Below are positions 7,372 to 64,000 of a DNA stretch of 64,000 bases, in pieces. The notes beneath the pieces are model-generated. The model saw nothing but the letters and a program-made list of their open reading frames with translations. It did not search any database and was not told the DNA's origin. Where the stretch lies: NCBI GenBank assembly GCA_024704765.1, contig JAKMXF010000026.1:1-64000 (forward strand), written 5' to 3'. The stretch comes from Oopsacas minuta (taxonomy: Eukaryota > Animalia > Porifera). Positions within the stretch are counted from its first letter, which is position 1. The number at the start of each line of letters is the position of its first letter. Both the position numbers and the translations under genes were made by a program.

Positions 7372-8103
7372 ATGGCATCACAAGTAAAGAACCATTTATC
7401 AAACATGAAAGATGAATTAGCTACGACTAATGAATCTATACTTGAAATGGATGTGCAGAAGAAAGCTTTAGATTCAGAGATTATTCTTTATGAAGCTGAA
7501 GTTTTGTCTTGTTCTTCAAAGCTTTCCATGTTGGAAAAACAACTAGATACTGTTGAACAAGAGCAAGAAGATATCAAACAAGAAGTAAAAGTCAGGAGGG
7601 CAAGGCTGAACAAGAAAGAACAAGAGATGGAGGTACTTGAAAGTAATCAGGATGAAGATGAGAACTTGAAAGTGTCCTTAGAAGATGATTCAAAAGTTTT
7701 AGTAGGAGAAATCACAGATGCTGAAGTAATGTTGGAGGATCATAAGCGGAGGTTGCGTGTGCTATTTTCACTGGTGGAGAAACGTGAGGAAGAGGGTGAG
7801 AGGTTTCAAGACCGTATTTTGAAGGCAAGAGAACAACTTGATAGAGTAAATGTCGAAATAGCTGAGCTGGAACAAGACGAGTCTCAATTGAGCGAGAACG
7901 AATGCATTTTAAGAGACGAGTTAAAAATCATCAATGAAGAATATCTAGTTGTAGATAACGAGTATGAAAATTTTGCAAGGCAGCGCACTAATTTGGAACA
8001 TGAGGTAAATGAAAAAACGAAAAAGCTAGAATTGATAGAAATAGAGTACGATAAGCAAAGAGATGAAATTTCCCAATTTGAGGATGTTATGAATGAGTTA
8101 TGA
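7372..8103 (+). CDS. Divergent short tropomyosin-like coiled-coil protein (243 aa, intronless)
   Basis: Uninterrupted E/K/L-rich heptad pattern, no prolines, length typical of short tropomyosins. MLEDHKRRLRVL...EKREEEGE and the C-terminal DEISQFEDVMNEL align by eye with the tropomyosin EEAARKL..VE..LERAEER and terminal LD..LNEL segments. Confidence 0.6.
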   Translation: MASQVKNHLSNMKDELATTNESILEMDVQKKALDSEIILYEAEVLSCSSKLSMLEKQLDTVEQEQEDIKQEVKVRRARLNKKEQEMEVLESNQDEDENLKVSLEDDSKVLVGEITDAEVMLEDHKRRLRVLFSLVEKREEEGERFQDRILKAREQLDRVNVEIAELEQDESQLSENECILRDELKIINEEYLVVDNEYENFARQRTNLEHEVNEKTKKLELIEIEYDKQRDEISQFEDVMNEL

Positions 8104-26482: not shown

Positions 26483-27818
26483 CAGGGTGTTTCACAATTG
26501 ATGTCGTGTTATACAATATTACATAACTAATAGAATACTAGATATATTACTACAATTATTTGCCAATATATCCACCACTAAGTTCAATACACTTATGGAT
26601 TCGTTTTGGCATTCCATCCATCAATTTATCCAAAACCTCTGGTGAAATATTGGACCATGCTGTTTTCAGTCGATTTTCCAACATTTTTATGTCTTTTATC
26701 TCACCTATTGAATCTAGATCATCTTTCAAAATCGACCATATGTTCTCAATGGGACTCAAGTCTGGAGAGTTGGCTGGCCAGGTACCTTTCGCCCAAAAAC
26801 TCTTTAGGTTACTTCTCAACCAATTTTGTGTCATGTTTGCCGTGTGAGCTGGAGCGCCATCTTGTTGAAATATCGCACGGGACATATTTTTTAACATTTT
26901 CCTCTCAACAACTGTGCCTCTTTCTCGCTTTCTGTTCATTGTAGACATTAAAGTTTTACCCATTATCTCACTAACATAGTACTCTGCAGATACAGTTTGT
27001 CCAACGGGAATGAAGTGTAACTCCGACAGTGCACGATGTGACATCATACCCCATACTTGAATTTTCTTTGGAAATTTCACCATCTGAACGGGCTCGACAT
27101 CCAATGTGTTTCTCGCCCAAACACAATCATTTTTCCTGTTTGGGGGATGATTTAACTCAAACGGTGATTCATCTGTAAATAATATGTTTTTCCAATCATT
27201 TGCTGTCCAATTGACACGTTCTTTACAAAATTTTAACCTAGCAGCCATGTTTTTCTCTGTTATTAACGGCTGCCGCTGGCATTTGTAAGATTTTACGCCC
27301 TTTTCTTTTGTCAAATAACGGTACACTGTACTCTGAGATACGGAATGACCTTTCAACTTTAATTTCTTGGATAGACCACGTACAGACTGTCGTTTTTCGC
27401 CAATTGATTTAGTAATTACAATCTTGGCAACTTTCGATATGGACGATTTACGGCCACGTCCCCCTTTGTTTTCTAATGTCAAATCATTCTTGAAAAGTCG
27501 CCACCAACGCTGAACTGTACGGATATTAACTCCAAGTTTAAAAGACACAAACTTCTGAGAAGAGCCAGCTTGTAGCATGCCAACAGCCTGTGAGCGAATC
27601 ATGATACTGTATTCTTTCACCATTATATTATGCAAATAATTAGCCCAATTTGGATATGGAAATAGAAGCTATAAAATGTTTCGATTGATGAATGAAATAA
27701 TTACTCAATAGAACCCTGTAAGATTAATTACGATTGCAAGTTTAAATACACAGATATTATTGCATAGGTGCATAATGAACAAATTTAGAAAATACGACAT
27801 CAATTGTGAAACACCCTG
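26483..27818 (-). mobile_element. Intact Tc1/mariner (IS630-Tc1-mariner) transposon, 1336 bp
   Basis: Perfect 25-bp TIRs CAGGGTGTTTCACAATTGATGTCGT, TA duplication on both sides, single uninterrupted ORF. Confidence 0.95.
26556..27635 (-). CDS. DD37E transposase, 359 aa
   Basis: N-terminal HTH region; ILFTDESPF (D), IFQQDGAPAH (D), SPDLSPIENIW (E). I count 37 residues between the second D and the E. Confidence 0.92.
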   Translation of the reverse strand: MHNIMVKEYSIMIRSQAVGMLQAGSSQKFVSFKLGVNIRTVQRWWRLFKNDLTLENKGGRGRKSSISKVAKIVITKSIGEKRQSVRGLSKKLKLKGHSVSQSTVYRYLTKEKGVKSYKCQRQPLITEKNMAARLKFCKERVNWTANDWKNILFTDESPFELNHPPNRKNDCVWARNTLDVEPVQMVKFPKKIQVWGMMSHRALSELHFIPVGQTVSAEYYVSEIMGKTLMSTMNRKRERGTVVERKMLKNMSRAIFQQDGAPAHTANMTQNWLRSNLKSFWAKGTWPANSPDLSPIENIWSILKDDLDSIGEIKDIKMLENRLKTAWSNISPEVLDKLMDGMPKRIHKCIELSGGYIGK

Positions 27819-27907
27819 TACATGCATGTCATGGTCTCTATTCTGCTATCTGATAACGTACAATTTAAAGACCCTGAATCATGTATGACTATTGGATATA
27901 CTTATTA

Positions 27908-30068
27908 TCATAAATCATCTGATAGTATACTAATATATAATATTTCTTGGAGGCTATTTGTAACGTCTAATTTCTTCTTTGCGTGCTTCAAACGATTCTG
28001 CACTAAGATGGGGTGACTACAACACAACAACCTGACTAAAATATCTCTAACATTATCTGTGAAATAATTTTTTCTTGCAAGATTCTCCCGATATCGCCTT
28101 ACAAATTTATTGCAGGATTCTAAACATTCCTCAGAGAGATTCTGTAATCCCTTACCATTATTGTAAGCACCTATTAACTGAAACGAATGGACAAGTAACT
28201 TGTGCTAGGATGGAGTAATGCTTGCCCATGGGTACTCAACTTGAATAAATTCGTACGTTTCTTTGCACAATTCATTTTGTCACAGTTAATCGAGTCACCA
28301 CTGTTGAGGAGTCTTAACAAAACAGATGGATTCGTCTGGATCTTCTCTAATGATACTTTACCTGAAGGATTAATGGAAGAAGTGGCCCACATCAACAAGT
28401 CTCTCTTATTTAAAAAGCAGTCTCGCGCAATGTTACCAGTAGTTGAAGTGCCGCCCTGGCTTGAAGGGATATCGACACTGAAGTTACATCTTTCCTGGAG
28501 TATAGCTCGAACCCGTTTCATGGAAGAATTTACTTTCGAGTTTGATGGCGCCCATACCTTGTGTCCTGCATCAAGATGGTATATCAACAGCATGAACCAC
28601 CTGAATACACAAAGGTAAGCATGCAAAGGAGATGCAGCTATAATATCGATGTTAGAAGTTGGTTGATGCGTAATACCAACACGTTGATTTGATGGGAGTT
28701 TCAAGTAATCTTCTTCATCAACCTCTTCAAAAAGTTGCCGAGCGTCGCTAATTAATCTGTTAATAGGGAAACCAGAACGGGCCCATTCTAAATTTTAATT
28801 TGACTATCCGTTGTAGTACACAGATGACAAGAAGCCCCACCACTCCAGCCAGCAATCCTGCTATCTTGGTATCAAAAAGGGAACGGACTATCTCGACCTA
28901 TGCATGGCCTCCAATAAGAGATAACCCATCCTGTATGATATGGTCTGGTTGAGGATTGACTATTGCATTCATGATAAGCTTTACACTAGAATATTTTTCT
29001 TTCAAAGCTATCAGTGCTACTGGCCTAAAGCAGAACGGAGAGTTGGGTGAGCTGTTATAGAACACGTCATTTCCAAGTGGGTTTGTAATTGATGGTACTT
29101 GGAATCCGAACAAAATGAAAGTTTTTGTTGCTTAATACAGGATAGTTGCTTTGTTGGTTATAGGTTTGATGACAACCGGAGCCATCCAATCCATCAGATA
29201 TCTTAATTTTTAGTGGGTAGTGTGAATCAGGAACTGGGTCTAATGTTGAAAGCAAGCGTTGAATGGTCAGACTAAGGATGGAATGATAAGAGACGCAAGT
29301 CCCAATTGACAATGATTCGGGGTTTCTGACTATTTCCATTTCATTTATTAGGCTTATTTCCCTACGATATTGCGAGACAAGCTTATAGGAAGGAAGCTTA
29401 ACATCACCTTTGAAAATTCTTTTCAGGTTCGTGTATTTACTCGCCCAATTTCTAAGCTGTCCAATATATAAGCACATTTAGAGATTTGTACTTTGTTCAA
29501 TACACTGCTAAAAGATCCCTTATCAATTATTTCTCTGCACATCTCTGAAGTATCACGGTCATAGGATTTATTTGAGACTAATTCTAAAGCGAGAGCGAGT
29601 AGTTGTTAAGGCTCAATCTTTTCTCTCTCTGCTAAAAAGTCCACATGCTTTAAAAGAACTCCAAGTCTCGATCTGGAAGTCTTCATGTGACATTCGAGAA
29701 TATGCTTCCGCGATTCAGTTACAATCTGTTCTGAAAAGTTTCGATTTCAGAATCAGTGACTAAAGAAGAAAATTCAGATCATCTGATATTCTCTTTCTTG
29801 GATTGGATATTGTTAGACGAATAGAGTGGAAAATCATGTTATCCCATGTTTCAAGATCCTTCCTGCGGTAAGCCTCTCTAGATGTTAGAAGTGATTTAAA
29901 TTTGAAATGGAGAGTAGCATTTTCTTCATCGGGTAAATGGTTGTTCTCAATAAGTTACCTAACGAGACTGTAACACTTCTTCCATTCGAAATGTACAAAC
30001 TATATGCCTCATTGTTCGTGATTAGTACAGACATGATCCGCAAAAGGGCTACTCTAACATAGAAACAT
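27908..30068 (-). pseudogene. RAG1-core-like (Transib-type) DDE transposase pseudogene
   Basis: Motifs in RAG1/Transib order: KISDGLDGSG (D1), NSSPNSPFCFRPV, SLFDTK...GGASCHLC (D2 plus CxxC), SPLHAY, STTGNIARDCF, YPWASITPS*HKLLVHS, LSEECLESCNKFVRRYRENLARK (E). Several stops and frameshifts. Confidence 0.85.
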
Positions 30069-31803: not shown

Positions 31804-34110
31804 ATGGGATGTGGTTCATCAACTCAAGCTTCATCCAGCATATCAATCAGGAATCCTGGCCCAAAACACTCAAAAGAAACGACACAAAGCTCTGCCCTCC
31901 TTGATCCAATAGCGAATATGAATTTTCCAGACCTTAGCGAACATAATAACTATATGTCGAAATGTCTCAACAAAGAGATATACTCCAAATTGTTCGCCCT
32001 TACTACTAAATCAGGCTTTAGGATTGACCAAGCTATACAAACTGGTGTTGACAACCCTGGCCATCCATTCATAATGACAGTAGGTTGTGTAGCAGGTGAT
32101 GAAGAATCCTATGAACTATTCTCTGACTTATTTGATCCTGTGATTGAGAAGAGACATAATGGTTACAAGAAATGTTCAAAACACATCACTGATCTGGATT
32201 TCAGTAAACTTGTGGGTGGTGAGCTAGATCCAGAATATGTCCTATCCTCTCGTGTCCGTACAGGTCGAAGTATCCGTGGATATTCTCTCCCGCCTCATTG
32301 TACCAGAGAGGAACGTAGAGGTGTAGAGAAGATTGTAGCAGAGGTTCTTTCTTGTTTCTCAGGTGAATTTCAAGGTGCCTATTATCCATTAAATGACATG
32401 ACAGAAGAACTACAAAACCAACTAATTGATGATCATTTTCTTTTTGACAAACCTGTCTCTCCCCTTCTCTTAGCTTCTCGTATGGCACGTGACTGGCCTG
32501 ATGCACGTGGTATTTGGCACAACGAGAAAAAGAATCTGTTAGTCTGGGTAAATGAAGAAGATCACACGCGTGTAATATCAATGCAACAAGGTGGCAATAT
32601 GCGTGAAGTGTTCACTCGATTTTGTGAAGGGCTGAACAAGTTTGAGAGTGAACTGAAAGCACTCGGTCAGACTCTTATGTGGAATGATCATTTAGGATAT
32701 ATCCTTACTTGCCCTTCTAATTTGGGTACTGGGCTTAGGGCAGGCGTCCATGTTAAGCTTCCCCTTCTGTCTAAAACTCCGCTTTTTGAAGAGATCTTAC
32801 TACATCTCCGCCTCCAGAAGAGAGGGATAGGAGGAGTTGATAAGGAATCCTCAGGGGGCGTGTTTGACATTTCTAATCTTGACAGGCTTGGTGTCTCTGA
32901 AGTACAGCTAGTCCAACTTGTCATTGACGGAGTTCAACTTTTGATTCAAATGGAGAAAAAGCTCAAAAGCAATGCTTGGATTCATGAGCTACTTCCTGAA
33001 GCCATCAAAGCTAATGATCCACTCAATAGTTTTCCTGATCTCTCAAAGCATAATAATTACATGGCAAAACATTTGTCCCCTGCTATCTATTTTGGTCTCA
33101 AAGATAAGGTAACGTCAAATGGTTTCACTCTAGATCACGCAATACAGACAGGTGTTGATAATCCTGGTCATCCTTTCATCATGACAGTTGGGTGCGTAGC
33201 AGGAGACGAAGAGACTTATAAGACATTTTCAGCTATGTTCGACCCAATCATTGAGGATAGACATAATGGATACAAGGTAGATGGGATCCATAAAACAGAC
33301 CTCGACCCGAATCACTTGAAAGGCGGAGAGCTAGATCCAGAATATGTCCTATCCTCTCGTGTCCGTACAGGTCGAAGTATCCGTGGATATTCTCTCCCGC
33401 CTCATTGTACCAGAGAGGAACGTAGAGGTGTAGAGAAGATTGTAGCAGAGGTTCTTTCTTGTTTCTCAGGTGAATTTCAAGGTGCCTATTATCCATTAAA
33501 TGACATGACAGAAGAACTACAAAACCAACTAATTGATGATCATTTTCTTTTTGACAAACCTGTCTCTCCCCTTCTCTTAGCTTCTCGTATGGCACGTGAC
33601 TGGCCTGATGCACGTGGTATTTGGCACAACGAGAAAAAGAATCTGTTAGTCTGGGTAAATGAAGAAGATCACACGCGTGTAATATCAATGCAACAAGGTG
33701 GCAATATGCGTGAAGTGTTCTCTCGATTTTGTGAAGGGTTGAACAAGTTTGAATCCGAGCTAAACAAGCGTAATCAAGAATTGATGTGGAGTGAGCACCT
33801 TGGTTACATTCTAACCTGCCCATCTAATCTAGGTACAGGGTTACGCGCTGGTGTTCATATCAAGCTGCCCAAACTTTGTCAACAAAAGGAATTTGATAGC
33901 ATACTCACATCCCTCCGCCTACAAAAAAGGGGCACAGGTGGAGTAGACACAGAAGCAACAGGTGGAGTTTTTGACATCTCAAATTTAGATCGTTTAGGAT
34001 TCTCTGAAGTTGAGCTAACTCAGAAGGTTATTGACGGGATAGTCCACCTTGTAAAGATGGAGAAATTGTTAGAGAAAGGGGATTCCATTTGTCATCTCAT
34101 ACCTCACTGA
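31804..34110 (+). CDS. CK: Two-domain (contiguous dimer) creatine kinase with N-terminal acylation motif, flagellar/protoflagellar-type
   Basis: Two complete phosphagen kinase domains 369 aa apart. Each has [21 protein letters not shown] (CK-type specificity loop), [22 protein letters not shown] and GGVD. The N-terminus is MGCGSS. No introns. Confidence 0.93.
32221..33720 (+). repeat. 393-bp identical direct repeat inside the CK gene (32221-32613 = 33328-33720)
   Basis: Line-by-line comparison shows no differences from GAGCTAGATCC to GAAGTGTTC, at an offset of 1107 bp. Flanking codons differ at most synonymous sites. Confidence 0.92.
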
Positions 34111-34789
34111 TTATCTTATTCGATACTTAATTATTCGACAACTCTATTTTACGATATATATCCACTTCCTGTCCACTCTTGTATTCTTATATGCTACTTA
34201 TTTATATGCCCATATGTACTACTAATACATTCATTTACTATTTATCAATCAATATCCTATCTTCTTTTGTTTTAGTAAGCTTACTCAATGCATATGACTT
34301 ACTTTATCTTCATTTCCAAGGTTTATTACACAGTCATTCTAATAAACCACGTTCTTGATGAAGAACGCTGTTTGTACAAAAGTTGTTTACTTAAGATGCG
34401 TATGTATTATGTATAAGATACTTGCTTTATCTATTTGAACCTTAGTACGAAATGTGTAAATTTTTGAACAGTAATGGCAATAGTTAAATTCTTTACAGTG
34501 CATTCAAATTGAGAACAATTTTTGTTAACAAATTCTGTTCGTAAGCATTCAGATGACGTCATTTCGATTCGGAAAAATTGTATAGACTTCGTGTGTTACT
34601 AAGTATCATGATTCAAATATTCTGGGAAAAATGAACCATTTTGATATTATCGAACAAATCGATTTCTCAATATATTTATTTATTATTTTATCCCTAGTCA
34701 AAAAATTGCATCGCAACATTGCCTTATGTGTAGAATGATATGCCATAGTAGGGTTTGGATTATCCGTTATTTATAGATACCCGGATACC

Positions 34790-53099: not shown

Positions 53100-55620
53100 T
53101 GTGCTTCGGGGTGATCGACAGCTAGTAGATGGTAGATATCAGCTAGTTTCTCTTTTACCATACTATAAGAACTCTGATCGAAAGAGGCAATATACGCTAT
53201 GTTCTTAACTCTGTTGTCATTATTGCATACCTTTCATCCTTTGAAATATTCGAATCAGTTTCCACAGTTCTAATGTCTTGTATATTGTTGTCATTGCATA
53301 TGAAATTGTATAGGACATAACCATTATCTTCACGACTCTTAGCCTAAACGTAGAAGAACAATGTTAATTAATGCACAAAATATTGGAATAGATTTTTCAG
53401 TGAATTTTAAAATGCATAACAGTAGTCTTACCCTCCAAAAATCTGCTATTGCATTGCATGGTACATCAGTCAATCTTTGTTGATGATAAACTAGTAGCAT
53501 GTGCCGACATGGCAAACCCATGATGCTGGAAACAGGCAAGTGCAAGATGTCAATGTTGTTATACGTGTTGATCTTCTTGACACTGTTGAATATAGACCCA
53601 AGTCAATTGCTATTAACTTCTCTGAATCATCATTTTGATAATCATATTCCTCTTGAGCAACTAAAAAAGTGAAATAAAAGCACAATATCTTAGTAAATAA
53701 TACACATAATTTAGTGCGTTTTACCTGTTTATGTATAGAACGTAATATGTTGCGTAGGCTATGGAATGGTTGGTAAGGCCATGGCCATGGCCTACCAAAG
53801 GCCTCACCAATGGCCCTAACAATCTCTAAACGAGTTACGCCTCTGTGTTTACTTCAAAGGACGTATTACACAGCTTAAGATTCAAATCATACATGTAACA
53901 CTTGAAGCTGCACTTATTATTATTATTATTATTATTATAATCTCAAAATTACCTGAGGGGTCTTCTCGAGATAATATGTGTCTGACTTCAAAAACTAACT
54001 CTTCAGATGAACTAGATCTAGATACTTCATCAACGCAATACTGCATACATTGAGCAATTTGAGCTCTCACAATTGTAAGTGCGAATGGGGTTATATCTAA
54101 GTTATTTTCTATAGGATGCTTAGTTGAATAAGTAGCCATTTTAAGTGCCAACCGGGTTGCACGCCCTTTATTTTGTTCTGAAAGAGTATCTCTATTCTCA
54201 TCAATTCTGTTTGCTAGGTGTGTAAGTAGAATATGAGAATTTAAGTAGTGTTTTATAGAGGCATGTACTGATTCAGAACGTTGGGTGGAGTGAGCACCCA
54301 AAGTAAGGTATTCCCAGGTCCACCATGCAGCCCACTGTTTCCTTTTTTCGTAGAGAGATTATAGAAATTTTTCAACTGAATGGTAATGAATTTCGGTGGT
54401 TGTTTCTTGTTTGTGTTGAACTTGTTCTAACAAACGATTCCACTCTTCATCAAATAACAAACGAGAATTAGAATCTTGCTTTTTTGCAAATGATCCACCA
54501 ACTTTGCAAGAACGTGTTCCAACTTCTACGCAAATTTTCACTTCTCCCACTGAATAGGGATTTCATATGCAACATTACATTTTGCCCAATGTGAAATGTG
54601 CAAAGGAGGTGTACAATGCAAGGAAACGATGTCTTTATAGCAGCAGCCATTGCTGGGTCACCATCCGTGATTATTACTTTTGGTGGTTGTTTAAAAGCTT
54701 TTAGAAATTCAGTGAAAACCCATACAAAAGATTCATGGGTTTCACGATCGAGTAGAAAACAAGCTAAAATTTGAGTTCTTCCGTCATTGTCAATTGTTGT
54801 AAAGGCTGAGAATTTAAGAGCGTATTTGTTCGTTCCATGACTTGTATCAAATATTAGTGGATTATGATCAAGATTCTGGGCCCAGCGTTCAAGGCTATTA
54901 GTTACTGCCCAAAATGCCGCATTCAAGGAGCCGTCCCCGACCGTTTGAACAGAAAAATATAGGCCTTTGCTGGATTGTCTCTGTTGGAGGTAGTCAATAA
55001 AATTTGAAGCACCAAAGCTTCTCTCTTCAACACTTGGTTGGAATCGATTATAGACATCTTGATATGTCCATGTGATAGGATAATTCTTATCATGAGCCTT
55101 GCTAATAAAAACTTGGTTGATTTTAGTTGCTGAGAGACCAGCGCGCTTTAGTTCAAACCCTAGTGGGTTGAATTCTAAAGGGAATTCTCTAAGTGAGGCT
55201 TGTGCTAGACTACCACTATTGTTTTCCACTAAACTGTGATTGTGGAAAAAGTTAGCATGCGCAATTGCCCATCCTTCAACACAATCTTCAATACGAGTAT
55301 TGTAAGGACAGTTAGTTCGCTGAGTAACTGTCATACGTACATCATTGTATAAACTCATTTTTCTTGATTTGTAACAAGATAACATTCTTTTTTCCCCTTC
55401 CTTGATGTTTGTCTGTAAGTAGAGGTCCACACAAGATTGAATCGCCCCCCACCAGTTGTAAAGTCACTAGCCCATGTTTTTTATTCCACTTTTGCTGTTG
55501 CATGTGATTCCCACGGTCCTTTAGGCATATCATCAGGTAATACAACAGATCTGATCCGCCTTAATTCAACAATTGTTCTACGAAAGCCAGATAATGTTGT
55601 TATTCTGTCAGATCTGGCAT
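53100..55620 (-). pseudogene. FAR1-like MULE transposase with SWIM finger, intron-containing, disrupted
   Basis: LIFDTSHGTNKYALKFSAFTTIDNDGRTQILACFLL...IITDGDPAMAAAI...HLLCTFH (DDE core), HSTQRSESVHASIK, and SCTCLFP/GLPCRH (SWIM). Frameshift in an A6 run near 54480, in-frame stop at 54359-54361, GT-AG introns at 53661-53724 and 53344-53431. Confidence 0.85.
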
Positions 55621-62255: not shown

Positions 62256-64000
62256 TTATTTGTATATTTTAAGCTTAGTATTATCCCTATTTAAAACCAT
62301 AAAATTGTAATTGCAGACTCTCTTCAACAAGATGATATTTGACCATGTAACACACAATTTCTTCAATATGTCCCGATTCCAAACGCCACAGGAGCAACAA
62401 TCATTCCAAACATCAGTATATTTCTCTGAAATGATTGTAATAGAAATGAGTACCAACAAACTACGGGACTGTGCAGAATAGAATTTCTTGCTGAGGGAAT
62501 CACAGTTATCTATCATCAGAAAGGCTTTATACAAGATAGTAACAGACTTTACTACACAAGAAGAAGGATATTTAAGAGAACCTCGATCTACTAAATTAAT
62601 CAAAGTATATTGAGAACCAACGTCATTATTAACTTCTAGGAGTCTATCTGTTGTTAAAAGATCGTGACAACATTGACAAGTATTTTACTTTTTTATGAAA
62701 GAGAAGGCTGCATATCCTGCTATATAGATGAGGCATTCAATCTGAGAAACTTCTAATTCAATGAGCGAGATATCATTCAATATAGTCATATAAGGTTCTA
62801 TATTGAGTTGCTTTTCATCACTTATAAACTCACAATCGTCTGCGAATTGCCTAAGGTATTCTTTTAGTGAAACGTTATCTGCCAAACCATATTTTATATC
62901 AAAAACTTTTAAAAGGTTGGAAAGTTGGAGTCTCGTTCGCTTTCTAAAACTTGGTTAAAAGATATTTGATAGTGAGACCCTGACATTTGTCTGTTTAATC
63001 CAAAATGGTGTTCTAAAGCATCATTTTGTATTCTCGCAGTAAGAAGATATTGGTACCCACAATTTTCAGTTAGTTGTTTGACTAGTAGTGGTAATGCCTC
63101 ACATGTATGTCTAGAGCTGGTAAAGGTTTGTGGCGTTAATTTTCCGGACAAAATGGTAGATAACCCAACTATCCAACCAGGAGACCACGTTGTTCAAAAA
63201 GAGCAACCGAAAATCGTCTGGGTATATTGGGGCTGAAAATTCATCATTAAAACGTATATTTTTCCCAACCCAGTTCACATTGAATATTTTCCATATCCGG
63301 TTAATAAGATCAAGAAAATCTACTGTTTGATTGATGTGTTTGGTGTCATTTTCGATTTTCCACGCTAATAGGCCAGCAGATGTTGTCTCATGAAAAATTT
63401 TCAATGCAAAACTGACATTTTTCCGTTCTAAGCTTAAGGGCCAACAAGCTTTCGCTGTTAATTTTGGTGCTCGTTTCAATAAATTACATCTATCCGATCT
63501 AAACAAATCTCGTATATCTTGAAATCGAGCGTAACAAATATCTGGATGTACAGATTTAGAGGTCAAATTGGCAGTAGAAATGCTGGCTCTAGGGATGGAG
63601 AGGTAAAAATTTTTGTTAGTGTCAATGATGTTTTGAATACTTACTAGACATTCGTCGAACTTCGGAAAAATGAAAGTGTTGTCAATATTTTTGAGATTCA
63701 ACCAATTATTTCGGATGCACTTAATGATATGAACACTATCAAAAAGCAAAATTAAATTTCTATGTGGGTTGCAGGGGTGTTGTACTTTTGGCTCCAGTTT
63801 CGAACTAGTTGAAAACAATTTGTATAAACGAACGTTCAGTGGATAGTTGTCAGTACAAACAGCTTCTACAAATAGACCGCAAGCTTCGATATCACAGATA
63901 GTAGACCTGACAATAGGATACAATGATTCAGCAGAAGAAGAACCCAAAGGAATCAACCGAACAATGGTAGAAAACTTGACCGATAGGCTAGAAACCATCA
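62256..64000 (-). pseudogene. P-element (THAP9-like) transposase, frameshifted, runs off window edge
   Basis: VCTDNYPLN (D), LLFDSVHIIKCIRNNWLN (D plus HxxKxxRNN), LLTARIQNDALEHHFGLNRQMSG (E), YIAGYAAF and C-terminal RGSLKYPS. Frameshifts near 63130 and 62910. Confidence 0.85.

What the first reader, a model, noticed from the sequence alone, without database searches (positions are those of the whole stretch)
31804..34110. Acylated two-domain creatine kinase: a possible intermediate between single-domain protoflagellar and three-domain flagellar CK
Seen: one intronless ORF with an MGCGSS N-terminus and exactly two complete CK domains. Established: flagellar CKs are N-myristoylated contiguous trimers, while sponge protoflagellar CKs are acylated single-domain enzymes. 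Contiguous dimers are better known for arginine and taurocyamine kinases. Inference: this is either a step in, or an independent parallel to, the fusion series that produced flagellar CK, with a membrane-anchored tandem enzyme in cilia or flagella.
Basis: partly seen in the sequence, partly recalled or inferred. Interest (0 to 1): 0.75.

Follow-up and report, generated by a model that had tools for sequence, protein, structure and literature searches.

The report
Glass-sponge membrane-anchored two-domain creatine kinase
This is a real, conserved glass-sponge gene for a lipid-anchored enzyme made of two complete creatine kinases joined head to tail, but it cannot be shown to be the missing step towards the three-part sperm-flagellum enzyme of other animals.

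Summary
Observation confirmed. Window 31804-34110 (+) is one uninterrupted 768-aa ORF in Oopsacas minuta contig JAKMXF010000026.1. It starts MGCGSS, a myristoyl-Gly2/palmitoyl-Cys3 motif, and holds two complete creatine-kinase domains. All 23 catalytic and creatine-specificity residues checked are intact in both.

It is neither an artefact nor a one-off. Seven other assemblies carry orthologous intronless two-domain genes of 762-775 aa that start MGC[GA]SST. In Aphrocallistes beatrix the whole ORF sits on metatranscriptome contigs colinear with the genome. Both domains are under strong purifying selection (dN/dS about 0.03-0.15, dS saturated).

A 393-nt tract is identical between the domains (32221-32613 = 33328-33720). 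This is recurrent gene conversion of the catalytic core, of different ages in different species. The scan had noted it on this same stretch (s1-215821).

The "intermediate" reading is neither shown nor excluded. Domain trees are a star, and concerted evolution blurs domain orthology. Acylated two-domain CKs also occur in corals and in the tunicate Molgula, where they derive from three-domain enzymes. One unidentified relative (P0046) adds a degenerate third domain, so domain number is labile.

Verdict: a new variant of a known kind, of moderate interest.

The parts
31804..34110 (+). Complete intronless coding sequence, 768 codons plus stop, of the two-domain creatine kinase
   Evidence: ORF list; Pfam 2x(PF02807+PF00217); exact product on record for JAKMXF010000026.1
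31798..31800 (+). In-frame TAA just upstream of the start codon; it fixes the N-terminus at Met-Gly-Cys
   Evidence: Sequence read
31804..31827 (+). Codons for MGCGSSTQ: the N-myristoylation (Gly2, Ser6) and palmitoylation (Cys3) motif
   Evidence: Translation. MGC[GA]SST is conserved in all 8 orthologues although the rest of the 40-residue N-terminal extension evolves fast, dN/dS 0.26-0.9. Acylation itself is inferred.
31876..33000 (+). CK domain 1 (residues 25-399, HMM envelope)
   Evidence: hmmsearch envelopes; catalytic residues intact. Its 320s loop is derived ([12 protein letters not shown] against the canonical GTGGVDT...).
32959..33030 (+). Inter-domain linker (residues 386-409, 24 aa) with the W-I-H-x-L-L-P motif
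   Evidence: Linker table. All 8 orthologues have the same 24-aa length, and six of them, plus P0046, have the W-I-H-x-L-L-P motif; rel2a, rel2d and rel2e read S-I-I-D-I-L-P.
33001..34107 (+). CK domain 2 (residues 400-768), with an ordinary CK C-terminus (…[13 protein letters not shown])
   Evidence: hmmsearch envelopes; catalytic residues intact; tail table
32221..32613 (+). Gene-conversion tract, copy in domain 1: 393 nt, 131 codons, residues 140-270
   Evidence: Exact identity at offset 1107; only 2 further mismatches up to 32645
33328..33720 (+). Gene-conversion tract, copy in domain 2 (residues 509-639)
   Evidence: On a central-block tree the domains pair by species.
34341..34346 (+). 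First AATAAA downstream of the stop codon; candidate polyadenylation signal
   Evidence: Pattern only; inferred, no reads available

Best explanation
The gene encodes a membrane-anchored tandem creatine kinase of glass sponges.

Shown:
- one intact intronless ORF;
- two full CK domains with every checked catalytic and creatine-specificity residue in place;
- an MGC N-terminus conserved across eight species;
- strong purifying selection on both domains;
- transcription of the whole two-domain ORF as one unspliced mRNA in the orthologue of Aphrocallistes beatrix.

Inferred:
- Gly2 is myristoylated and Cys3 palmitoylated, which ties the enzyme to the inner face of a membrane.
- Both active sites regenerate ATP from phosphocreatine close to an ATP consumer. 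The most likely sites are the flagella of the collar bodies that drive the sponge's water current, and sperm flagella, by analogy with the myristoylated flagellar CK of sea-urchin sperm.

The catalytic core of the two domains (residues 140-270 and 509-639) is repeatedly homogenised by inter-domain gene conversion. The N-terminal lobe, the C-terminal part, the linker and the tail stay different and domain-specific.

On origin, it belongs to the acylated flagellar/protoflagellar branch of CKs. Within that branch it is best seen as a lineage-specific domain-number variant, at least as old as the split between the Oopsacas and Aphrocallistes lineages. Domain number is labile in this branch: 1, 2 or 3 domains occur in different lineages. 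Nothing shows this gene to be a preserved intermediate. My rough split is: independent duplication in the glass-sponge stem about 0.4, reduction from three domains about 0.25, a retained ancestral two-domain stage about 0.15-0.2, and the rest undecided. The confidence given here is for the reality, nature and likely working of the gene, not for any one origin.
For: ORF and domains. Catalytic residues. Each domain of the model superposes on human CKB with TM 0.82-0.84, and PDB sequence hits to CK-B/M have E about 1e-170.

Orthologues P0045 and P0047-P0052 are 67-79% identical, 762-775 aa, and start MGC[GA]SST. The five whose loci I fetched are single ORFs.

Expression: RNA contigs L006 and L007 come from runs SRR29297744 and SRR29297746. 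These runs are the A. beatrix metatranscriptome (PMC11525543). The contigs are 100% colinear with genomic L005 and cover the ORF plus about 80 and 60 nt of flank. The same paper reports creatine in sponges and its synthesis genes in A. beatrix.

Selection: dN/dS is 0.02-0.15 in both domains with dS saturated.

Conversion: on the flanks, D1s and D2s form separate orthologous clades (100/99* and 98/90*). On the central block they pair by species (95-99*). Central dS between D1 and D2 is 0.02, 0.07, 0.35 and 0.90 in four species, while the flanks are mostly saturated (dS 0.78 or more where it could be computed).

Labile domain number: Molgula D1 and D2 pair with Ciona D1 and D3 (97-100*). The coral two-domain forms keep the D3-type 'LM' tail and a long D2-D3-type linker. 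P0046 falls in the glass-sponge clade (96-97*) and has a degenerate third domain.
Against: There is no direct evidence of acylation, localisation or enzyme activity. No RNA or long-read check was possible for O. minuta itself. The inter-domain arrangement in the AlphaFold model is unreliable (pTM 0.54). The organism is documented for only two of the eight species (O. minuta, A. beatrix); the other six are inferred to be glass sponges from sequence similarity and shared transposon families. The evolutionary origin is unresolved. AU tests reject neither a clade with the demosponge single-domain CKs (p 0.93) nor one with the unidentified three-domain 'ena3' group (p 0.79).
Confidence: 0.8

Rival explanations
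1. It is a preserved evolutionary intermediate. On this view the acylated D1-D2 fusion arose before sponges and eumetazoans split, and the third domain of flagellar CK was added later in the eumetazoan line.
For: The MGC acylation motif is shared with flagellar CKs of cnidarians and bilaterians. The 24-aa linker matches the 23-25 aa typical of most D1-D2 linkers of three-domain flagellar CKs and not their 28-55 aa D2-D3 linkers. The terminal domain lacks the derived 'LM' tail of eumetazoan D3. No D3 relic lies downstream. The clade lies within the weakly supported flagellar/protoflagellar group.
Against: D1 and D2 are each other's closest relatives on the unconverted flanks (91/97) and pair with no flagellar domain. 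The backbone is a star. Linker similarity is mainly one of length, and a residue-level alignment needs gaps. The demosponge single-domain CKs would need a separate explanation. Concerted evolution can mimic or hide any of these signals.
Confidence: 0.17
2. It is a secondary reduction. On this view a three-domain ancestor lost one domain, for example by unequal crossing-over within the homogenised central block, as happened in Molgula and probably in stony corals.
For: Molgula D1 and D2 pair with Ciona/Styela D1 and D3 (97-100*). Coral two-domain CKs keep the D3 'LM' tail and a long linker. P0046 belongs to the same clade, shares the W-I-H-x-L-L-P linker and carries a third, degenerate domain. 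Identical blocks of 393 nt 1107 nt apart are good substrates for unequal recombination.
Against: All eight species have exactly two domains, and both flanks of each domain are orthologous across species. There is no relic of a third domain. The tail is the ordinary CK type rather than 'LM'. The third domain of P0046 is only about 40% identical to any CK, so its origin is unknown.
Confidence: 0.25
3. It is an assembly artefact: a three-domain gene collapsed through the 393-nt identical block, or two neighbouring single-domain genes wrongly joined.
For: An exact 393-nt repeat can mislead short-read assemblers.
Against: Seven independent assemblies, with contig names typical of long-read assemblers, give the same two-domain single ORF with orthologous D1 and D2 flanks. 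Two RNA contigs of A. beatrix span both domains. The reading frame runs through the linker, whose length is conserved. Conversion tracts of graded age in other species show that the identity is biological.
Confidence: 0.03

Closest known systems
Three-domain flagellar creatine kinase (sea-urchin sperm type; for example Chaetopterus Q67ER6, Nematostella, Ciona)
   Same: N-terminal MGC acylation motif followed by a variable extension. Contiguous complete CK domains in one chain, all with intact catalytic residues. D1-D2 linker of about 23-25 aa. 64-68% identity.
   Different: Two domains, not three. The terminal domain lacks the 'LM' tail seen in 10 of 12 eumetazoan D3s. Its domains pair with none of D1, D2 or D3 on trees. 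The gene is intronless.
Single-domain sponge CKs (Tethya aurantium Q6RSH0 and Q6RSH2, Amphimedon), the 'protoflagellar' type of the literature (Sona et al. 2004, cited from memory and listed in PMC6429109)
   Same: Sponge origin. 69-71% identity to domain 1. They fall in the same weakly supported group on the full-length tree, and an AU test does not reject a joint clade.
   Different: Those are single-domain proteins, and the sequences retrieved here have no Gly2, so no myristoylation motif. The glass-sponge protein is a tandem with an MGC start.
Two-domain acylated CKs of stony corals (Desmophyllum pertusum OS493_034913, Porites) and of the tunicate Molgula tectiformis (B5MGP7)
   Same: MGC start and two complete CK domains, about 760-800 aa.
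   Different: Those keep the D3-type 'LM' tail and a long 36-42 aa linker, and their domains pair with D1 (or D1/D2) and D3 of three-domain relatives. They are therefore reduced flagellar CKs. The glass-sponge protein has a 24-aa linker, an 'LE' tail and forms its own clade.
Contiguous two-domain arginine kinase (Anthopleura, PDB 4RF6) and taurocyamine kinase (Schistosoma, PDB 4WO8)
   Same: Two complete phosphagen-kinase domains in one polypeptide. These are the best whole-chain PDB matches.
   Different: Only 36-38% identical, with a different guanidino substrate and no acylation motif. The modelled domain arrangement does not superpose (TM 0.37-0.41), but the model's arrangement is unreliable.
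P0046: three-domain transcript-like contig from run SRR2064712, organism unknown
   Same: MGC start, two intact CK domains inside the glass-sponge clade (96-97*), and the same W-I-H-x-L-L-P linker.
   Different: It carries a third domain that looks catalytically dead (TSPSNLGT in place of CPSNLGT, NKEDH in place of NEEDH; about 40% identity to any CK).

Membership tests
Creatine kinase (phosphagen kinase family, EC 2.7.3.2) | N-terminal (PF02807) plus catalytic (PF00217) ATP:guanido phosphotransferase domains | tested here: met
   Two copies of each, E 8e-59 and 6e-149
Creatine kinase (phosphagen kinase family, EC 2.7.3.2) | Reactive Cys283 in CPSNLGT, the catalytic NEEDH acids and the phosphate-binding arginines 130, 132, 236, 292, 320 and 341 | tested here: met
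   All present in both domains
Creatine kinase (phosphagen kinase family, EC 2.7.3.2) | Creatine-specific pocket and loops (Ile69, Val325, the [14 protein letters not shown] loop) rather than arginine-, glycocyamine- or taurocyamine-kinase types | tested here: met
   sequence hits to CK-B/M at E 1e-170 against about 1e-82 for monomeric arginine kinases
Creatine kinase (phosphagen kinase family, EC 2.7.3.2) | Creatine phosphorylation activity | not testable with these tools
   Needs recombinant enzyme assays of the whole protein and of each domain
Flagellar creatine kinase (three-domain) | Three contiguous CK domains in one polypeptide | tested here: not met
   Exactly two domains; no third domain or relic in the window or beside orthologues
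Flagellar creatine kinase (three-domain) | N-terminal myristoylation signal (Met-Gly..., Ser/Thr at position 6) | tested here: met
   MGCGSS, conserved in 8 species and shared with named flagellar CKs. The modification itself was not tested.
Flagellar creatine kinase (three-domain) | Domains orthologous to D1, D2 or D3 of flagellar CK. This includes the 'LM' tail of the terminal domain, a signature I derived here. | tested here: inconclusive
   The tail is 'LE', not 'LM'. Trees give a polytomy. Concerted evolution confounds the test.
Flagellar creatine kinase (three-domain) | Location on the flagellar membrane | not testable with these tools
   Needs localisation in collar bodies and sperm
Sponge 'protoflagellar' single-domain CK | A single CK domain | tested here: not met
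   Two domains
Sponge 'protoflagellar' single-domain CK | Phylogenetic grouping with the Tethya and Amphimedon CKs | tested here: inconclusive
   Not recovered in ML trees, but not rejected by the AU test (p 0.93)
Contiguous two-domain phosphagen kinases (arginine and taurocyamine kinase type) | Two complete phosphagen-kinase domains fused in one chain | tested here: met
   This is shared architecture only; at 36-38% identity and with different substrate residues it is an independent fusion.

The most novel reading that the evidence does not exclude
The acylated D1-D2 fusion of glass sponges is homologous to D1-D2 of eumetazoan flagellar CK. If so, Hexactinellida would preserve the two-domain stage through which the three-domain sperm enzyme evolved, and the origin of the membrane-anchored phosphocreatine shuttle enzyme would move back to the last common ancestor of sponges and other animals.
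Probability: 0.17. Interest if true: 0.7.

Novelty: new variant of a known kind. Interest (0 to 1): 0.45.

Why it matters
To my knowledge, textbook accounts place the fusion of CK domains into a lipid-anchored flagellar enzyme after sponges branched off, with sponges holding only single-domain forms. This gene shows that a whole sponge class carries an old, selected, expressed tandem CK with the same acylation motif. Multi-domain anchored CKs are therefore either older or more easily re-invented than thought.

It also gives a clean natural example of gene conversion confined to the catalytic core of a tandem enzyme, which explains why domain trees of these kinases mislead.

Glass sponges are syncytial animals whose main mechanical work is flagellar pumping. 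A membrane-bound phosphocreatine system there is a testable piece of their energy supply. It also links to the creatine that their symbionts consume (PMC11525543).

Tried and rejected
There is no direct RNA or long-read check for O. minuta.
2. Retrogene signs. There is no poly(A) tract after the stop codon; target-site duplications were not searched for. All orthologues are intronless, so any retroposition would be ancient and untraceable.
3. Positional orthology with the unidentified three-domain 'ena3' genes. Those always sit among ALDH1L exons. No ALDH sequence lies in the window or at five orthologous loci, so this was rejected.
4. Conserved synteny around the gene. Only transposon families are shared (RAG1-like, THAP9-like, MULE), and in different orientations.
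5. Relic of a third domain downstream. None was found.
6. Stand-alone relatives of the degenerate third domain of P0046. None is closer than about 39%.
7. Resolving the origin by trees. Quick and careful searches, site-heterogeneous and LG models, and flank-only and full-length alignments all gave a star backbone. AU tests rejected nothing, one constrained search did not finish, and the quick free tree was worse than the constrained ones.
8. Linker homology at residue level. Only the length and a loose pattern agree with flagellar CK D1-D2 linkers, which is too weak to count.
9. Inter-domain geometry from AlphaFold. pTM is 0.54, so it is not usable.
10. Literature. Full-text searches found no paper describing a two-domain CK or a hexactinellid non-mitochondrial CK. 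The O. minuta genome paper does not mention creatine.
11. Organisms behind P0046 and the ERZ assemblies. Accession searches resolved only the A. beatrix runs.
12. The large representative protein search and the atlas search were not used. The family is clear, and no claim here rests on an absence of relatives.
Full report
**What is there.** Window 31804-34110 (+) is a single 768-codon ORF. An in-frame TAA lies three bases before the ATG, so the product must begin Met-Gly-Cys-Gly-Ser-Ser unless an upstream exon splices into the ORF. The conserved MGC start in all orthologues argues against that. Pfam finds two full sets of the N-terminal and catalytic phosphagen-kinase domains, and my own HMM gives envelopes 25-399 and 400-768. 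The second copy lies 1107 nt after the first. A gene with exactly this product is on record for GenBank assembly GCA_024704765.1, contig JAKMXF010000026.1, at the same coordinates as the window. JAKMXF is the Oopsacas minuta (Hexactinellida) genome project (PMC10280926). That paper does not mention creatine.

**Is it a working creatine kinase?** I aligned both domains with vertebrate CK-M and CK-B. All 23 positions checked are canonical in both. They include the reactive cysteine in CPSNLGT, the NEEDH acids, six phosphate-binding arginines, and Ile69, Val325 and Asp326 of the creatine pocket and loops. PDB sequence hits are CK-B/M at E about 1e-170, against about 1e-82 for monomeric arginine kinases. 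In an AlphaFold model (pLDDT 72.6, pTM 0.54) each domain superposes on human CK-B with TM 0.82-0.84. The relative placement of the domains is not reliable. Domain 1 has a somewhat derived 320s loop (GIGGVDK... in place of GTGGVDT...), so its kinetics may differ. That is inference.

**Acylation motif.** MGCGSS has Gly2 and Ser6, the classical N-myristoyltransferase context, and Cys3 next to it, the dual-acylation pattern of Src-family kinases and G-alpha subunits (established knowledge, not tested here). The first eight residues are conserved (MGC[GA]SST) in all eight orthologues. The remaining roughly 30 residues of the N-terminal extension evolve fast, with dN/dS 0.26-0.9. Named three-domain flagellar CKs of cnidarians, hemichordates, echinoderms, tunicates, amphioxus and annelids start the same way, MGC[GAV]xS.

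**Relatives and expression.**
- The word search found seven close two-domain proteins: P0045 and P0047-P0052, 762-775 aa, 67-79% identical.
- The five loci I fetched are all single uninterrupted ORFs on long contigs. They share RAG1-like, THAP9-like and MULE transposon families with the window.
- The most distant of the seven, P0052, also sits on two 2.4-kb contigs from runs SRR29297744 and SRR29297746. These runs are the metatranscriptome of the glass sponge Aphrocallistes beatrix (PMC11525543).
- Those RNA contigs are 100% colinear with the genomic contig and cover the ORF plus about 80 and 60 nt of flank. The two-domain ORF is therefore transcribed as one unspliced message in a glass sponge of a different family (Aphrocallistidae).
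- The same paper reports creatine in sponges and host creatine-synthesis genes in A. beatrix.
- No full-length RNA contig exists for O. minuta in the look-up. One possible reason is that an exact 393-nt repeat breaks de Bruijn contigs.

**Selection.** Between O. minuta and five relatives, synonymous sites are saturated while dN is 0.08-0.26 in the domain segments. This gives dN/dS of about 0.02-0.15 where it could be computed, for both domains. The linker and the N-terminal extension are looser. The two-domain state is old and both halves are maintained.

**The identical tract.** Bases 32221-32613 equal 33328-33720 exactly (393 nt, residues 140-270 and 509-639). There are only two further mismatches up to 32645, while the flanks are 44-82% identical. 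The tract is not an assembly quirk, for three reasons.
- In three other species the same central region shows graded similarity between D1 and D2. Central dS is 0.02 in O. minuta and 0.07, 0.35 and 0.90 in the others, while the flanks are mostly saturated (dS 0.78 or more where computable).
- On the flanks all D1s form one clade and all D2s another (100/99* and 98/90*).
- On the central block D1 and D2 pair by species (95-99*).

This is recurrent inter-domain gene conversion confined to the catalytic core. The three domains of an unidentified three-domain CK show the same pattern.

**Evolutionary placement.**
- On the full-length tree the glass-sponge clade falls in a weakly supported group (90/86). 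That group also holds the flagellar CK domains, the demosponge single-domain CKs and an unidentified 'ena3' clade. It excludes vertebrate, cnidarian and Oscarella cytoplasmic-type CKs and the mitochondrial CKs.
- Inside that group the backbone is a star under every setting tried.
- AU tests reject neither a clade with the demosponge CKs (p 0.93) nor one with 'ena3' (p 0.79).
- Glass-sponge D1 and D2 are each other's nearest relatives even on unconverted flanks (91/97). Read literally, this means a duplication in the glass-sponge stem.
- That reading is unsafe. P0046 is a transcript-like three-domain sequence from an unknown organism, and it falls in the same clade (96-97*). It shares the distinctive W-I-H-x-L-L-P linker, yet its D1 and D2 branch outside both glass-sponge domain clades. 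This pattern is best explained by concerted evolution after a shared fusion. The same blurring may hide deeper orthology.

**Signatures other than trees.**
- The linker between the domains is 24 aa in all eight species. That is close to the 23-25 aa of most flagellar-CK D1-D2 linkers (outliers are 15-39 aa) and unlike their 28-55 aa D2-D3 linkers.
- In 10 of 12 eumetazoan three-domain CKs the last domain ends with an 'LM' variant of the usual C-terminal '...LE.G.SI..L.P' motif. The glass-sponge terminal domain has the ordinary 'LE' form.
- The coral and Molgula two-domain acylated CKs keep the 'LM' tail and a long linker. Molgula D1 and D2 pair with Ciona/Styela D1 and D3 at 97-100*. They are reduced three-domain enzymes.
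- No relic of a third domain follows the glass-sponge genes.

These points fit either a D1-D2-like ancestral state or an independent fusion, and they speak mildly against a recent loss of D3. P0046, with its degenerate third domain (TSPSNLGT, NKEDH; about 40% identity to any CK), shows that the clade is not uniformly two-domain.

- The Tethya and Amphimedon single-domain CKs retrieved here lack Gly2. The only acylated single-domain CK in my hits (P0141, unknown organism) groups with 'ena3'.
- Two-domain acylated CKs exist in several lineages in the databases. I found none described in the searchable literature.

**Mechanism proposed.**
- Shown: sequence competence of two CK active sites, a conserved acylation motif, conservation, and expression in an orthologue.
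- Inferred: co-translational myristoylation and palmitoylation anchor the tandem enzyme to a membrane. There it converts phosphocreatine and ADP to ATP next to a consumer. The most likely sites are the flagella of collar bodies and sperm, as with the myristoylated sea-urchin flagellar CK (from memory: Tombes and Shapiro 1985, Quest et al.; the first is listed in PMC6429109).
- A mitochondrial CK is on record for the glass sponge Vazella (P0282). It would supply the other end of such a shuttle.
- Gene conversion keeps the catalytic cores alike. The lobes, linker and tails differ, possibly because they have domain-specific roles. Alternatively, conversion may only start where identity is already high.

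**Verdict.** This is a new domain-number variant of a known enzyme kind, of moderate interest.

Noticed in passing
window 7372-8103 (+): A 243-aa uninterrupted ORF matches almost the full Pfam Tropomyosin profile (E 2e-11, positions 3-241 of 242). It is a second intronless gene for a normally multi-exon cytoskeletal protein on this contig.
   Followed up: no
window 26556-29477 (-): The stretch another note calls a RAG1-core-like transposon holds a Tc1/mariner-type ORF (HTH_Tnp_Tc3_2 + DDE_3, 26559-27635). Next to it, 27992-29128 is 30-67% identical in protein to RAG1_RNase_H-like ORFs that lie 2 kb upstream of the orthologous CK gene in another assembly (L010), in the opposite orientation. The family is therefore shared and mobile, not syntenic.
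   Followed up: partly
window 54468-55430 (-) and 63111-63998 (-): A MULE transposase ORF and a THAP9/TNP-like (P-element-type) ORF. A 54%-identical copy of the latter lies just upstream of the CK orthologue in L009.
   Followed up: partly
L012 (Logan SRR2064712 contig), protein P0046: A three-domain acylated CK relative. Its third domain has lost the reactive cysteine and the NEED acids, so it looks like a pseudo-enzyme domain fused to two active ones. The organism is unknown. Another note reports a pseudo-enzyme-like CK domain elsewhere in the O. minuta genome (s1-309956); I could not compare the two.
   Followed up: partly
L003, L008, L011 (ENA assemblies ERZ25069267, ERZ21862620, ERZ26695902): There is a clade of at least nine intronless three-domain CKs from unidentified host genomes. 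In two of three loci they lie between inverted ALDH1L (10-formyl-THF dehydrogenase) exon sets, and in the third next to one. After the glass-sponge group they are the closest relatives of the window protein (72-73%). They also lack the eumetazoan 'LM' D3 tail.
   Followed up: partly
L006:1-12: The first 12 nt of one A. beatrix RNA contig do not match the genomic contig. This could be a short 5' exon, a leader or an assembly artefact.
   Followed up: no
Proteins P0085 (Styela clava, 749 aa) against P0016 and P0100: Styela has a second two-domain CK without an acylation motif. Both its domains group with the cytoplasmic-type Ciona CK, which suggests a separate tandem fusion of a non-flagellar CK.
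   Followed up: no
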